Origin: Octopus sinensis
Taxonomy: Eukaryota
Direction: 5' to 3'
DNA: 64,000 nt
Assembly: GCF_006345805.1 (NCBI RefSeq)
Contig: NC_043006.1
Span: forward strand, 16,988,001 to 17,052,000
In this document: piece after piece, positions 5,219-42,154 of the stretch
How positions within the stretch are numbered: position 1 is the first letter of the stretch
Layout of the letters: the number at the start of each line of letters is the position of its first letter
The notes under the pieces: model-generated
What the model was told of the DNA's origin: nothing
The model's input: only the letters and a program-made list of their open reading frames with translations
Database searches by the model: none
Made by a program: the position numbers and the translations under genes

Positions 5219-5452
5219 AAAATATTATAGAAAGGAATATTGAAATTTTTTTCATTTTCCTTTGTGAAAAGTTCTTCATCTGAGGAGGAAAGCATGTCAT
5301 TACAAGAAGAGTCCTTGGCCCGAGATTTATCAGAGAGGTTACTCTTGCTCCTAGTAATGAAGCATTTTCTACCCTTTGTAACCTTACAACCCCACACTGA
5401 TAAGTCCTCCAAGAGTGCAGAGTAGCCAGTTATATTGGATGTGATGTGACGG
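5219..5452 (-). CDS. UVRAG: Candidate in-frame cassette exon of UVRAG (78 codons, Ser/Asp/Glu/Lys-rich)
   Basis: Acceptor ctcctgtttgctttttacatttag and donor gtaagt; 234 nt, phase 2 to 2; open only in the frame UVRAG requires. No recognisable homology to vertebrate UVRAG. Confidence 0.5.
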
Positions 5453-23111: not shown

Positions 23112-23206
23112 TTTTGTATCCTGCAGGTGAAGACAGGATAAAAACACTTCCCATTCTAAGAAAAGTTTGAAGACATCATGACCAACCCAAACCCTAACTA
23201 GCAATG
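23112..23206 (-). CDS. UVRAG: UVRAG coding exon, (S)LLVRVWVGHDVFKLFLEWEVFLSCLHLQDTK
   Basis: Acceptor ctctcactag and donor gtaagt; 95 nt, phase 1 to 0. Matches CFVVKIWGG..YQLLIEWKVCL. Confidence 0.92.
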
Positions 23207-23215
23207 CTAGTGAGA

Positions 23216-23224
23216 GTTAAAGAA
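23216..23224 (-). promoter_or_regulatory. U12-type branch site TTCTTTAAC
   Basis: One mismatch to the consensus TTCCTTAAC; 9 nt separate it from the exon start (tctcactag). Confidence 0.75.
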
Positions 23225-23669
23225 AACTTTAAAGCAAGATTTCAAAACCAGGAAGAATAGAAATTAAGCATTTTACTGTGAGGTTAGAAAGAAAAGAAAG
23301 ATAGTGGGTTATCTATAAATCCCATAGGAATTTACAATAAAATGTTGCAGCACACACATTCATAATATCTATACATGTATAAAACTTACAATAGGCTTTG
23401 GCCAATAATGGCCAAAGCCTTGCTTAAACAGCACCACATGGAGTAGCCTTTTAAGTCAAATTGTGTGTGGGTCTCCAGAAATGGACTGTGCCTAAAATAT
23501 CAGAGCTTACTCTTCATTGCAGTACATACTCTCATCAAATTTTATACATTTTATTAACTTTTTGTTTTCTTGGACAACATTTTCCCCCCTTAACATTTCT
23601 AATATTACAACTAACACAATCATTTCAGCAAAGAGATACACTTTATTTCAGTCCTAATGACATGTTTAA

Positions 23670-23890
23670 CCCTTTAGCATTTAAACCAGCTATATCCGGC
23701 CCAAATATTCTATCTGTTTTATGATCAACTTGGTTAGATCTAGCCTCTTACACATTAGTTGACAATGTCATTCTAAAAATAAACAATCACACCATCAAAT
23801 TCTCAAAGCTATGAAACACTGCATGATGTCTTTAAAAGAATCTGAATAAATAAGCATTACATTTGACAGAATAATCTGAATGCTAAAGGG
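23670..23890. mobile_element. piggyBac-like MITE
   Basis: TTAA|CCCTTTAGCAT...ATGCTAAAGGG|TTAA termini. Confidence 0.75.
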
Positions 23891-23923
23891 TTAATGAAGG
23901 CATAGCATCTATCCGACACGAAT

Positions 23924-24375
23924 CATCATCATCATCATCGTTTAGCATCTGCTTTCCATGCTAGCATGGGTTGGACGGTTCAACTGGGGTCTGGGAAGCC
24001 AGAAGGCTGCACCAGGCCCAGTCTGATCTGGCAATGTTTCTACGGCTGGATGCCCTTCCTAATGCCAATGACTCCGTGAGTTTAGTGCGTGCTTTTTACG
24101 TGCCAGACGAGGCTGGCAAACGGCCACAATCGGATGGTGCTTTTTACGTGCCACCGGCACAGGGGCCAGGCAAGGCTGGCAATGGCCACGATAGGATGGT
24201 GCTTTTTACGTGCCACCAGCACGAGGTCAGTCGCGGCGGCACTGGCAACGGCCACGTTCGGATGGTTCTCTTACGTATCACCGGCACTGGTATCATAGCT
24301 GCAATTTGCATTGATGTTGATCAATTTCGATTTTGGATTTTCACTTGCCTCAACAGGTCTTCACAAGTAGAGTTT
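23924..24375 (-). mobile_element. SINE family B (long copy, several internal units)
   Basis: (CAT)n tail on the plus strand; repeated GTGCTTTTTACGTGCC units. Confidence 0.8.
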
Positions 24376-25079
24376 TGTGTCCCAAATAAATACAAAATAA
24401 TGAGCTACTGGCCAGCCACATGGCAATGATTCCAAACCTTACTTAGATTGCTTGCATGGTCTAATGGTTAAGCACAAACTTGAATGAATAAGCTATTACC
24501 ATCTTGGCTGAAGTGTCATAATTCCTATTTCATTGCTGTGTTCTAGGACAGGGCCAGCTTTAGGCATAGTGAAGTTTCCAGCTAAGAGGTTCTGTAGAGA
24601 CCCTATTAAGAAATTGTTAACAGAGAACTGAGTTGTATAATAACTAAACTGAGTAAGAATGCAGCCAAGATTATAACAGATCCAAGCAAAATAAGAGTGT
24701 TACACTTCTCAAATGCTTAATTATAAAATAACAAAAAATCCTTTAAACTGCAAAACTAATATTCCTGTATTTTTTTTAATATTTAGGATTAATCTTTTAA
24801 TGTTAATTGTTCCTAATAAAGTTAAATCATTATGAATAATGAAACTCTGACAAATGGTAAAAAATTTTTTAAATCCATATTTTGAGAGATTTTAAGCTGT
24901 AGCTTATTTAATGAATGTCTAAATCTAGCCATGGTTCTCACTAAAACAGTGAATATATCTTACTCAACTTCCTGGTATCATAGCACTTAAATTTGAAGAT
25001 AATTATTCAACACTTACTGGAATTAGCAAATAGCAGCATAGCTTGAGTCAAATCCTGTTTGATGAGAAACCTAATTTGG

Positions 25080-25089
25080 AAAAGGATAC
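25080..25089 (-). promoter_or_regulatory. U12-type 5' splice site GTATCCTTTT
   Basis: Matches the minor-spliceosome donor consensus RTATCCTTT exactly, at the position protein homology and phase require. Confidence 0.85.
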
Positions 25090-25153
25090 ACTTTTTGCTT
25101 GTCTCAACCTCTTCAGATTTAGTTGTGAGATCAAAGGCCTGCCATGTTGGATT
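25090..25153 (-). CDS. UVRAG: UVRAG coding exon, NPTWQAFDLTTKSEEVETSKK; ends at a U12-type donor
   Basis: Acceptor ttcaattttccag; NPTW motif of the UVRAG C2 domain; 64 nt, phase 0 to 1; donor GTATCCTTTT at 25089-25080. Confidence 0.9.
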
Positions 25154-40207: not shown

Positions 40208-40861
40208 TGCATCTACATGATATGTTTTTACAGTGCACACTCGTAAGGGTTAGTTTTAGAGTTGGTTAGGGTTACACAGATCCATCAGGACCTCTGTATT
40301 TAAGTAGTACCAACAAATCTTCCTCAAATCACACTCCACAGTTTTCCTTTTTTAAAAGACACATCAAATACTGTAGTCCTTGATACACTGAGCTTGAATA
40401 AAAAAAGATTGAATAGTCAAAGCTACAGTGCCTTTGATGATAGATCTATTGATCAGGGCTAACCTGGAGTTACCAACAGCAGCATCTACATAAGCTGACT
40501 AATAGTTATTGACCCACTTCAGTGATAGGAGATGAAGATAAAGTTATGCAACAGTTATGTCGTTTTGTTAACTTCTGCTCCAATTTTAAAATGGTGTGGT
40601 TTAAGTTAATATAATATTAAGTATATCGAATCTAAAGAGAAGACATAGAATGCTCGTAGTGGGCTCATCCCCATATTTCTGTTGAAATACACTGCCTTTG
40701 TTTCAATTTTGAAATTAAAGAAGAATTTAGTAAAATAACTGTCATTATTATTCTGGAGTAATCTCGTTTCAATTTTGAAAATAATGAAGGATTTAGAAAA
40801 ATAATTCATTATTGATCTGGAGTAATTAGGTGTCAATTTTGAAGATAATGAAGAATTTAGT
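40208..40861 (+). repeat. 654-bp direct repeat, copy 1
   Basis: By manual comparison differs from 41500-42154 by one 1-bp indel and one substitution. Confidence 0.92.
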
Positions 40862-41032: not shown

Positions 41033-41153
41033 CTGGTGATTTTGCATCGGTATGTAGTGTAAAAAATGTTGACAATTTGTTATTGTCTGTCCCTAGTTCG
41101 TCTTTGTACACTAGATTCCGCAAGGAGACACTTTTCAAATGACGGATCCTTTT
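41033..41153 (-). CDS. UVRAG: UVRAG coding exon (first visible; N-terminal C2 domain), KRIRHLKSVSLRNLVYKDELGTDNNKLSTFFTLHTDAKSP
   Basis: Acceptor ttatttgcag and donor G|gtaata; 121 nt, phase 0 to 1. Matches the recalled UVRAG motif QRRLRHLRNIAARNI...DTYFTLH. Confidence 0.93.
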
Positions 41154-41499
41154 CTGCAAATAAGAAGTATATATTTAGTTGCATTGCTTATTTACTAAAT
41201 AAAAAAAAATTCACAAATTAATGATATCACAGTTATTTATTAAAATGGTTATTCAGGTATTTAGAAAAAGGCTTGTAAGAATCTTTTTGATGAAATATCT
41301 CTAATAATTTTTTCATAATGATAGTAAAATACCAACCCATTTTAGTTAAAACTAATTTCTTAAAGCAATATTTCATTTATACAAACAATATTTGGTAAGA
41401 ACTTACACTGGCTCAAACTAACAAGAAAGTTTTGAGGTAGTTGCTTGACCTACAAGAAATAGTAGACAAATTGGCACTACTTAAATATAGAGGTCCCGA

Positions 41500-42154
41500 T
41501 GCATCTACATGATATGTTTTTACAGTGCACACTCGTAAGGGTTAGTTTTAGAGTTGGTTAGGGTTACACAGATCCATCAGGACCTCTGTATTTAAGTAGT
41601 ACCAACAAATCTTCCTCAAATCACACTCCACAGTTTTCCTTTTTTAAAAGACACATCAAATACTGTAGTCCTTGATACACTGAGCTTGAATAAAAAAAGA
41701 TTGAATAGTCAAAGCTACAGTGCCTTTGATGATAGATCTATTTGATCAGGGCTAACCTGGAGTTACCAACAGCAGCATCTACATAAGCTGACTAATAGTT
41801 ATTGACCCACTTCAGTGATAGGAGATGAAGATAAAGTTATGCAACAGTTATGTCGTTTTGTTAACTTCTGCTCCAATTTTAAAATGGTGTGGTTTAAGTT
41901 AATATAATATTAAGTATATCGAATCTAAAGAGAAGACATAGAATGCTCGTAGTGGGCTCATCCCCATATTTCTGTTGAAATACACTGCCTTTGTTTCAAT
42001 TTTGAAATTAAAGAAGAATTTAGTAAAATAACTGTCATTATTATTCTGGAGTAATCTCGTTTCAATTTTGAAAATAAAGAAGGATTTAGAAAAATAATTC
42101 ATTATTGATCTGGAGTAATTAGGTGTCAATTTTGAAGATAATGAAGAATTTAGT
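41500..42154 (+). repeat. 655-bp direct repeat, copy 2
   Basis: See copy 1. Its terminal degenerate subrepeats (aattttgaaaataatgaagaatttag) continue to about 42240. Confidence 0.92.

What the first reader, a model, noticed from the sequence alone, without database searches (positions are those of the whole stretch)
23207..25089. U12-type (minor spliceosome) GT-AG intron splitting the UVRAG C2 domain
Seen: protein homology and phase place the donor at T|GTATCCTTTT, a perfect U12 consensus. The 3' end has TTCTTTAAC followed by TCTCACTAG, the short branch-to-AG spacing typical of U12 introns. Every other intron here has an ordinary GTRAG-like or GTA donor. Knowledge: U12 introns are rare, usually ancient and rate-limiting for expression. 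From memory the human NPTW...YLGQQ segment is one uninterrupted exon. Inference: an ancestral U12 intron lost in vertebrates, or a rare gain, placing a core autophagy gene under minor-spliceosome control.
Basis: partly seen in the sequence, partly recalled or inferred. Interest (0 to 1): 0.72.

Follow-up and report, generated by a model that had tools for sequence, protein, structure and literature searches.

The report
Ancient U12-type intron in octopus UVRAG
The octopus autophagy gene UVRAG carries one genuine minor-spliceosome (U12-type) intron that dates back at least to the last common ancestor of bilaterian animals and was deleted in bony vertebrates, which makes it a clean but ordinary member of a well-known intron class.

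Summary
The window is Octopus sinensis chromosome sequence carrying UVRAG on the minus strand. Exact mapping of the NCBI protein models leaves one possible junction, intron 25089..23207 (1883 nt, phase 1). Its donor is T|GTATCCTTTT and the branch site TTCTTTAAC puts the branch A 10 nt before the 3' junction. The other 14 UVRAG introns have GTAAGT, GTGAGT or GTAA-type donors.

The genome encodes U11, U12, U4atac and U6atac. Of the 14 introns tested, this one pairs best with the octopus's own U11, U6atac and U12 recognition boxes and worst with the U1 5' end.

An intron sits at the same alignment column and phase in all seven invertebrate orthologues mapped:
- **U12-type:** Octopus, Argonauta, the scallop Argopecten, the brachiopod Lingula and amphioxus.
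- **U2-type:** Lottia and Capitella, where a −1 T-to-G change turns Ser into Val.
- **Absent:** a teleost and a bird, which keep the neighbouring introns.

U12-dependent splicing itself and any regulatory effect remain inferred. This is a new member of a known kind and of modest interest. O. sinensis minor introns were already surveyed genome-wide in 2023.

The parts
25090..25153 (-). UVRAG coding exon 4 (NPTWQAFDLTTKSEEVETSKK plus the first base T of a split Ser codon), upstream of the U12 intron
   Evidence: Exact mapping of P0121; sequence read.
25081..25089 (-). U12-type 5' splice site GTATCCTTT (9 of 9 matches to RTATCCTTT), preceded by T at position -1
   Evidence: Predicted duplexes with the octopus's own U11 5' end and U6atac box are the strongest of 14 introns (-6.9 kcal/mol each), and the duplex with the U1 5' end is the weakest (-2.4).
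23207..25089 (-). The U12-type GT-AG intron: 1883 nt, phase 1, intron 4 of 15 in the coding region
   Evidence: The only frame-consistent junction for P0121. Both NCBI isoforms, plus the O. vulgaris, O. bimaculoides and Argonauta models, read ...ETSKK|SLLVRVW.
23216..23224 (-). Branch-point sequence TTCTTTAAC (8 of 9 matches to TTCCTTRAC). The likely branch A is at 23217, with 10 nt after it up to the 3' junction. The C-to-T difference gives a G.U pair with U12.
   Evidence: The duplex with the octopus U12 box AAUGAGUAAGGAAAAUAA is -11.9 kcal/mol, the best of 14.
23207..23208 (-). 3' splice site AG
23112..23206 (-). UVRAG coding exon 5 ((S)LLVRVWVGHDVFKLFLEWEVFLSCLHLQDTK), the second half of the C2 domain
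   Evidence: alignment to human UVRAG.
25012..25017 (-). In-frame cryptic U2-like donor cca|GTAAGT at intron position +73. It has the same phase and would add 24 residues. It is not used in any model.
   Evidence: The read-through frame closes after 6 codons in Argonauta, so it is not a conserved exon extension.
23960..24330 (-). High-copy dispersed repeat (SINE-like, G+C-rich, with an internal 62-nt tandem unit) inserted in the intron. It accounts for part of the intron's greater length compared with the orthologues.
   Evidence: The genome search gave 5277 candidate loci, and all 40 scored copies are full length at 89-94% identity; tandem unit.

Best explanation
Window 25089..23207 (minus strand) is a bona fide U12-type (minor-spliceosome) intron of the GT-AG subtype in Octopus sinensis UVRAG. 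It interrupts a Ser codon (T|CA) in the C2 domain. By analogy with studied U12 introns, the U11/U12 di-snRNP would recognise the 5' splice site GTATCCTTT (through U11, later U6atac) and the branch site TTCTTTAAC (through U12) together. The first AG 10 nt past the branch A would serve as the 3' splice site. The intron is orthologous to U12-type introns at the same codon position in Argonauta, a scallop, a brachiopod and amphioxus, so it was already U12-type in the last common ancestor of protostomes and deuterostomes. It later converted to U2-type in the Lottia and Capitella lineages and was deleted precisely before the divergence of ray-finned fishes and tetrapods. Shown here: the junction, the motifs, the snRNA genes and their complementarity, the orthology and the phylogenetic pattern. 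Inferred: actual U12-dependent catalysis, and any effect on UVRAG expression.
For: The junction is unique and exact. The donor matches RTATCCTTT 9 of 9, and the branch site matches 8 of 9 at 10 nt. All 14 other introns of the gene are U2-like. U12 (126.6 bits), U11 (94.5), U6atac (96.9) and U4atac (83.8) genes are present with intact recognition boxes GAGUAAGGAAAAU, UAAAAGGG and AAAAAGGAGAGA. This intron gives the best U11, U6atac and U12 duplexes and the worst U1 duplex of 14 introns. The orthologous intron, at the same alignment column and in phase 1, reads GTATCCTTC/TTCCTTAAC in Argonauta, GTATCCTTT/TACCTTGAC in Argopecten, GTATCCTTA/TTCCTCAAC in Lingula and GTATCCTTG/ATCCTTGAC in Branchiostoma belcheri, with the branch A 10-16 nt from the 3' junction. 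Across 127 introns of 9 orthologues, the only five donors within 1 mismatch of the U12 consensus are these five (p = 8e-8). All five have T at -1, while the two U2-type versions have G at -1. That is the pattern predicted by the class-conversion model in PMC7367187. Logan contigs of at most 3.7 kb from another cephalopod encode up to the full 747-residue protein uninterrupted, so they must be transcript assemblies; they carry the spliced junction DTSKK|SLLVRVW.
Against: No RNA-seq reads from O. sinensis itself were examined, so the junction rests on NCBI gene models and on assembled transcripts of a related species. No intronIC score was computed. The polypyrimidine content upstream of the 3' splice site does not separate these introns from U2 introns (0.64-0.68 against a mean of 0.69). 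The U12-box duplex energy discriminates only weakly, because two U2 introns reach -10.9 and -11.0. Some introns with a U12 consensus can also be spliced by the major spliceosome (abstract of PMC10853781, listed). The branch-to-AG spacing of 10 nt is, from my memory of mutational studies, at the short end of the functional range.
Confidence: 0.92

Rival explanations
1. The real exon runs 72 nt further, to the strong U2-type donor cca|GTAAGT at window 25017. That donor is in the same phase and would add 24 residues (CILFQIRFLIKQDLTQAMLLFAN...) to the C2 domain. On this reading the GTATCCTTT is only coding sequence.
For: The frame stays open for 27 codons past the U12 donor, and a consensus GTAAGT lies in frame before the stop. 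tblastn aligned KKCILFQI weakly to human SCFVVKI.
Against: None of the annotated Octopus or Argonauta models, nor the assembled cephalopod transcripts, contains the insert. With the U12 donor, the NPTW-to-VRVW spacing matches human and most orthologues without a gap; only Capitella carries a 2-residue insertion. The read-through frame closes after 6 codons in Argonauta, 10 in Argopecten and 8 in Branchiostoma. By my rough estimate, 24-27 open codons in 65% A+T sequence would arise by chance about 15% of the time.
Confidence: 0.04
2. The intron has U12-like motifs but is removed by the major (U2-type) spliceosome, either wholly or in competition with the minor one, as a hybrid or dual-class intron.
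For: It has GT-AG ends. Its pyrimidine content near the 3' end (0.68) resembles that of U2 introns. Dual-spliced sites are reported in human (abstract of PMC10853781, listed). The same intron did become U2-type in Lottia and Capitella.
Against: Its predicted pairing with the U1 5' end is the weakest of all 14 introns (-2.4 kcal/mol against -5.6 to -10.7). The -1 base is T, not G. Both U12 motifs have been kept in five lineages while the rest of the intron diverged in sequence and length (237-1883 nt), which implies selection through the minor spliceosome.
Confidence: 0.04
3. A recent gain, or a U2-to-U12 conversion, specific to cephalopods.
For: Lottia and Capitella carry U2-type introns at this site, and vertebrates carry none.
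Against: The same U12-type intron is present in a bivalve, a brachiopod and a cephalochordate. This option would require at least four independent conversions in the direction regarded as very rare (PMC7367187, PMC10639083).
Confidence: 0.01

Closest known systems
U12-type GT-AG introns as catalogued by intronIC (IAOD, Moyer et al. 2020, PMC7367187; pan-eukaryotic survey of Larue & Roy 2023, PMC10639083, which included Octopus sinensis)
   Same: It has the 5' splice site /GTATCCTTT, a TCCTTRAC-like branch site a short fixed distance from the 3' splice site, a non-zero phase, T at -1, deep conservation across animals, and a host genome with U11, U12, U4atac and U6atac.
   Different: Nothing about its class is different. 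This particular intron and host gene are not mentioned in any searchable paper. Because human lacks the intron, UVRAG should not count as a minor-intron gene in human-centred lists.
Examples of U12-to-U2 class conversion (Burge et al. 1998; Dietrich et al. 1997; Table 1 of PMC7367187)
   Same: At one orthologous position, some lineages have a U12-type intron and others a U2-type one. The converted versions have gained G at -1 and a GTRAG-like donor and have lost the branch-site motif.
   Different: Here the -1 change falls on the first base of a split codon. The class change therefore goes with an amino-acid change: Ser (TCN) in all five U12 species and Val (GTN) in both converted species. This is a small and tidy illustration, not a new principle.
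Vertebrate UVRAG gene structure (human protein in PDB 7BL1 and 9RX5)
   Same: It is the same protein (E = 1.7e-87 over residues 13-467). The flanking introns are shared at alignment columns 91, 103 and 160 in the bird (columns 160 and, shifted by one, 91/92 in the teleost model, which lacks the small exon between them).
   Different: In the teleost and the bird the two octopus exons are fused into one 54-codon exon, NPTW...GQQ. The intron was deleted, not converted.

Membership tests
U12-type (minor-spliceosome) intron, GT-AG subtype | 5' splice site matching /RTATCCTTT directly at the exon boundary | tested here: met
   GTATCCTTT matches 9 of 9 at the only junction compatible with the protein.
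U12-type (minor-spliceosome) intron, GT-AG subtype | Branch-point sequence TCCTTRAC-like, with the branch A roughly 10-20 nt from the 3' splice site | tested here: met
   TTCTTTAAC matches TTCCTTRAC 8 of 9, with 10 nt after the branch A. The mismatch still pairs as G.U with U12.
U12-type (minor-spliceosome) intron, GT-AG subtype | Weak or absent polypyrimidine tract compared with U2 introns | tested here: inconclusive
   The pyrimidine fraction at -25..-4 is 0.68, against a mean of 0.69 for 120 other introns. This measure does not discriminate.
U12-type (minor-spliceosome) intron, GT-AG subtype | The host genome encodes the minor-spliceosome snRNAs U11, U12, U4atac and U6atac | tested here: met
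   All four exceed their Rfam gathering scores in the O. sinensis assembly and have intact recognition boxes.
U12-type (minor-spliceosome) intron, GT-AG subtype | Better complementarity to U11, U6atac and U12 than to U1 | tested here: met
   It ranks best of 14 introns for U11 (-6.9), U6atac (-6.9) and U12 (-11.9) and worst for the U1 5' end (-2.4). The U1 sequence used was the textbook one, not taken from this genome.
U12-type (minor-spliceosome) intron, GT-AG subtype | Both motifs conserved at the orthologous intron in distant species | tested here: met
   Argonauta, Argopecten, Lingula and Branchiostoma keep both motifs. At the site, 5 of 7 introns qualify against 0 of 120 elsewhere, p = 8e-8.
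U12-type (minor-spliceosome) intron, GT-AG subtype | Bias in phase and in the -1 base (non-zero phase, -1 U) | tested here: met
   The intron is in phase 1 and has T at -1 in all five U12-type orthologues. The bias itself is described in PMC7367187.
U12-type (minor-spliceosome) intron, GT-AG subtype | The junction is used in real transcripts | tested here: inconclusive
   Gene models of three Octopus species and Argonauta use it, as do assembled contigs of at most 3.7 kb from another cephalopod that can only be transcripts. No O. sinensis reads were available.
U12-type (minor-spliceosome) intron, GT-AG subtype | Probability above threshold from the intronIC SVM | not tested
   intronIC and its position weight matrices are not installed here.
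U12-type (minor-spliceosome) intron, GT-AG subtype | Splicing depends on U11, U12 and U6atac | not testable with these tools
   This needs knock-down or suppressor-snRNA experiments.
UVRAG / Vps38 orthologue (host gene) | Full-length similarity to UVRAG, with an N-terminal C2 region, a coiled coil and an Atg14/Vps38 BARA-type domain | tested here: met
   E = 1.7e-87 to human UVRAG chains 7BL1 and 9RX5 over residues 13-467. PF10186 scores 35.7 bits against a cut-off of 33.2. NCBI names both models UVRAG. Pfam C2 (PF00168) itself did not reach significance on the octopus protein.

The most novel reading that the evidence does not exclude
The U12 intron in the C2-domain region of UVRAG may have been kept for more than 550 million years because slow or regulated minor splicing sets the dosage of UVRAG, and so of PI3KC3 complex II (autophagosome and endosome maturation), in invertebrates and amphioxus. 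On this reading bony vertebrates, Lottia and Capitella each escaped that control, by deletion or by class conversion, and the conversion was paid for by a Ser-to-Val change in the protein.
Probability: 0.1. Interest if true: 0.5.

Novelty: new member of a known kind. Interest (0 to 1): 0.3.

Why it matters
The result adds one well-documented case to the catalogue of ancestral bilaterian U12 introns. A single orthologous position shows all three known fates: retention, conversion to U2-type with the predicted -1 T-to-G change, and precise deletion. Because the -1 base is the first base of a split codon, the case shows that an intron-class constraint can fix an amino acid (Ser), and that release from the constraint goes with a substitution (Val).

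It also means UVRAG depends on the minor spliceosome in molluscs, brachiopods and amphioxus but not in bony vertebrates. That matters to anyone carrying minor-splicing phenotypes, or human lists of minor-intron genes, across phyla. It does not change how minor splicing or autophagy is understood.

Tried and rejected
1. A chimeric human/octopus query returned only vertebrates. It was replaced by a query made of octopus exon peptides.
2. Four of the 12 gene look-ups found no record: Branchiostoma lanceolatum, Haliotis rufescens, Ptychodera flava and the lamprey Lethenteron reissneri. Lamprey, shark, hemichordates, echinoderms, arthropods and cnidarians therefore remain unsampled.
3. The count of the donor motif in the window is not significant on its own, so it was not used as evidence.
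4. Polypyrimidine content and the U12-box duplex energy discriminate poorly, so they were not relied on.
5. The downstream in-frame GTAAGT donor was considered as the true exon end and rejected.
6. A scan of the whole window against Rfam found no RNA gene, so the intron hosts no known snoRNA or similar RNA. Stop-to-stop frames in the intron are repeat-derived or trivial.
7. Literature searches for UVRAG together with 'U12-type' or 'minor intron' returned no papers. The IAOD paper and its one held supplement do not mention UVRAG or Octopus.

Full report
**What the window is.** The window is G000:C10:16988001-17052000 of a 2.72-Gb, 13,516-contig assembly. The best protein hits to the exon peptides are the two NCBI models 'UV radiation resistance-associated protein isoform X2/X1 [Octopus sinensis]' (P0121, 708 aa; P0122, 786 aa). 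Both lie on a contig of 105,892,736 bases, the same length as C10. P0121 matches human UVRAG in PDB entries 7BL1 and 9RX5 at E = 1.7e-87 over residues 13-467 and passes Pfam PF10186. The gene is on the minus strand and is larger than the window. Exon 1 lies 12 kb beyond the window end, and the last six coding exons lie up to about 8.3 kb beyond the window start.

**Checking the observation.** I mapped P0121 back onto the DNA by exact k-mer diagonals. For each pair of neighbouring exons I then listed every donor/acceptor pair that reproduces the protein. Between residues 92 and 93 there is exactly one solution: intron 25089..23207, 1883 nt, GT-AG, phase 1. The donor is aaaagt|GTATCCTTTTCCAA and the acceptor is ...AAAGTTTTCTTTAACTCTCACTAG|catt. 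The branch motif TTCTTTAAC occupies 23224..23216, which leaves 10 nt after the probable branch A at 23217. The other 13 introns mapped have donors GTAATA, GTAAGT (x4), GTGAGT (x4), GTACGA, GTAAAA, GTAAGG and GTAACT. Intron 1 has CAG|GTAAAG. The description is therefore correct, including the claim that this donor is unique in the gene.

**Chance.** The motif count alone says nothing. GTATCCTTT occurs once in the window against 0.73 expected, and RTATCCTT occurs five times against 5.15 expected. The signal lies in its position and in the comparative data described below.

**Is there a minor spliceosome?** The assembly contains U12 (126.6 bits), U11 (94.5), U6atac (96.9) and U4atac (83.8), all full length and above the Rfam gathering scores. 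The recognition boxes are intact: GAGUAAGGAAAAU in U12, 5'-UAAAAGGG in U11 and AAAAAGGAGAGA in U6atac. I computed RNAduplex energies between these octopus boxes and each of the 14 introns mapped within the fetched sequence. The candidate is the best for U11 (-6.9 kcal/mol; the others range from +1.4 to -4.4), for U6atac (-6.9; the others -0.4 to -4.6) and for U12 (-11.9; the next best are -11.0 and -10.9). It is the worst for the textbook U1 5' end (-2.4; the others -5.6 to -10.7). The U12 comparison is only weakly discriminating, because the A-rich box also pairs with ordinary pyrimidine tracts.

**Orthologous introns.** I fetched the annotated UVRAG genes of eight other species and mapped their introns in the same way (mapping). 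A protein alignment places an intron at the same column and in phase 1 in all seven invertebrates.
- **U12-type in five.**
  - O. sinensis has T|GTATCCTTT and TTCTTTAAC.
  - Argonauta hians has T|GTATCCTTC and a perfect TTCCTTAAC.
  - The scallop Argopecten irradians has T|GTATCCTTT and TACCTTGAC.
  - The brachiopod Lingula anatina has T|GTATCCTTA and TTCCTCAAC.
  - The cephalochordate Branchiostoma belcheri has T|GTATCCTTG and ATCCTTGAC.
  - The branch A lies 10-16 nt from the 3' junction in all five.
- **U2-type in two.** Lottia gigantea has G|GTAAGC (196 nt) and Capitella teleta has G|GTGCGT (52 nt). Neither has a branch motif.
- **Absent in two.** The teleost Mugilogobius chulae and the bird Upupa epops encode NPTW...GQQ as one 54-codon exon. 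The bird keeps the neighbouring introns at alignment columns 91, 103 and 160; the teleost model keeps those at columns 92 (shifted by one) and 160 and lacks the small exon between 91 and 103.

Over all 127 mapped introns, the five donors within one mismatch of RTATCCTTT are exactly these five (5 of 7 at the site against 0 of 120 elsewhere, Fisher p = 8e-8). A branch motif within one mismatch at 8-20 nt is found in 5 of 7 against 2 of 120 (p = 1.7e-6). Intron length ranges from 237 to 1883 nt, so only the splice signals are conserved.

**Evolutionary reading.** A U12-type intron shared by molluscs, a brachiopod and a cephalochordate was present in the last common ancestor of protostomes and deuterostomes. 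The alternative needs at least four parallel U2-to-U12 conversions, the direction regarded as very rare (PMC7367187, PMC10639083). Lottia and Capitella are then minor-to-major conversions, and bony vertebrates show a precise deletion. All five U12 versions have T at -1 and split a Ser codon (TCN). Both converted versions have G at -1 and a Val codon (GTN). This fits the excess of -1U and the avoidance of -1G described for U12 GT-AG introns, and the proposal that a gain of -1G drives conversion (PMC7367187).

Human DNA could not be read here. Teleost and bird bracket human, however, and a marmoset isoform (P0090) lacks exactly human residues 91-144, NPTW...YLGQQ, as expected for one cassette exon. 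The lamprey look-up failed, so 'lost in vertebrates' is established only for bony vertebrates.

**Transcript support.** Both O. sinensis isoforms, the O. vulgaris and O. bimaculoides models and the Argonauta model all read ETSKK|SLLVRVW. Logan contigs from another cephalopod (P0124, P0216, P0219, P0220) are 978-3685 nt long and encode up to the full 747-residue protein uninterrupted, so they can only be transcripts. They carry DTSKK|SLLVRVW. The only Logan fragment found in the P0121 and P0122 clusters (P0214) covers the C-terminus and does not span the junction.

**Rival donor.** The frame stays open for 27 codons past the U12 donor, and a consensus cca|GTAAGT lies in frame at +73 (window 25017). 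This explains why tblastn read through the donor. No model or transcript contains the 24 extra residues. With the U12 donor, the NPTW-to-VRVW spacing matches human and most orthologues without a gap; only Capitella carries a 2-residue insertion. The read-through closes after 6-10 codons in Argonauta, Argopecten and Branchiostoma. It is best seen as a potential cryptic U2 site, of the kind known to be activated when minor splicing fails. That last point is from general knowledge and was not tested here.

**Comparison with what is known.** On every sequence and comparative criterion I could test, this is an ordinary member of the U12 GT-AG class. The polypyrimidine criterion was uninformative. 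An intronIC score and biochemical dependence could not be tested. O. sinensis was one of the species processed with intronIC by Larue & Roy (2023), who note that molluscs and Lingula are relatively rich in minor introns. The existence of such introns in this genome is therefore known. No searchable paper links UVRAG to U12 or minor introns, which is expected because human UVRAG lacks the intron. The functional gloss, that slow splicing limits the expression of an autophagy gene, is an extrapolation. The 2023 survey argues that neutral processes explain much of minor-intron evolution.

**Verdict.** This is a new member of a known kind, of modest interest (0.3). Its main value is as a neat example in which retention, conversion and deletion are all seen at a single orthologous site.

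Noticed in passing
G000 genome-wide (e.g. C19:20092690-20092805; L010, L011): U6atac has at least 43 genomic matches above the Rfam gathering score, whereas U11, U12 and U4atac have 1 to 5 matches above theirs. This may be an amplified or retro-copied U6atac family in the octopus genome.
   Followed up: no
window 40208-40748 and 41500-42041: Two 100%-identical direct repeat blocks (243 + 300 nt, spacing 1292-1293) flank UVRAG coding exon 2 (41156..41033). This could be a very recent duplication or an assembly artefact (also seen as duplicate tblastn hits).
   Followed up: partly
window 5219-5452, minus strand: Isoform X1 (P0122) includes an extra 234-nt cassette exon inside the 11.9-kb intron. 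It adds 78 residues (SRHITSNITGYSALLEDLSVWGCKV...) in the coiled-coil region. These residues are absent from isoform X2 and from the Argonauta and transcript-derived cephalopod sequences. O. bimaculoides has a 786-aa X1 model in the same 90% cluster.
   Followed up: partly
window 23960-24330, inside the U12 intron: A 371-nt G+C-rich dispersed repeat (SINE-like, with an internal 62-nt tandem unit) gave 5277 candidate loci in the genome. All 40 scored copies are full length at 89-94% identity. It inflates the octopus intron compared with the 917-nt Argonauta intron.
   Followed up: partly
window 25012-25017, minus strand: An in-frame consensus U2 donor GTAAGT lies 72 nt inside the U12 intron, in the same phase as the U12 donor. 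It is a plausible cryptic site if minor splicing is impaired, and it is not conserved in Argonauta.
   Followed up: yes
L015 (Lottia) and L021 (Capitella), orthologous intron: Both lineages that converted the intron to U2-type changed the split codon from Ser (T|CN) to Val (G|TN). The intron-class change therefore coincides with a substitution in the C2 domain.
   Followed up: partly
P0212 (Octopus vulgaris model, 807 aa): The O. vulgaris UVRAG model has an unrelated 100-residue C-terminal tail (…STVESLLKKHTKFNDGGLIASYK…) in place of the conserved end. This is probably a gene-model fusion with a transposon-like ORF.
   Followed up: no
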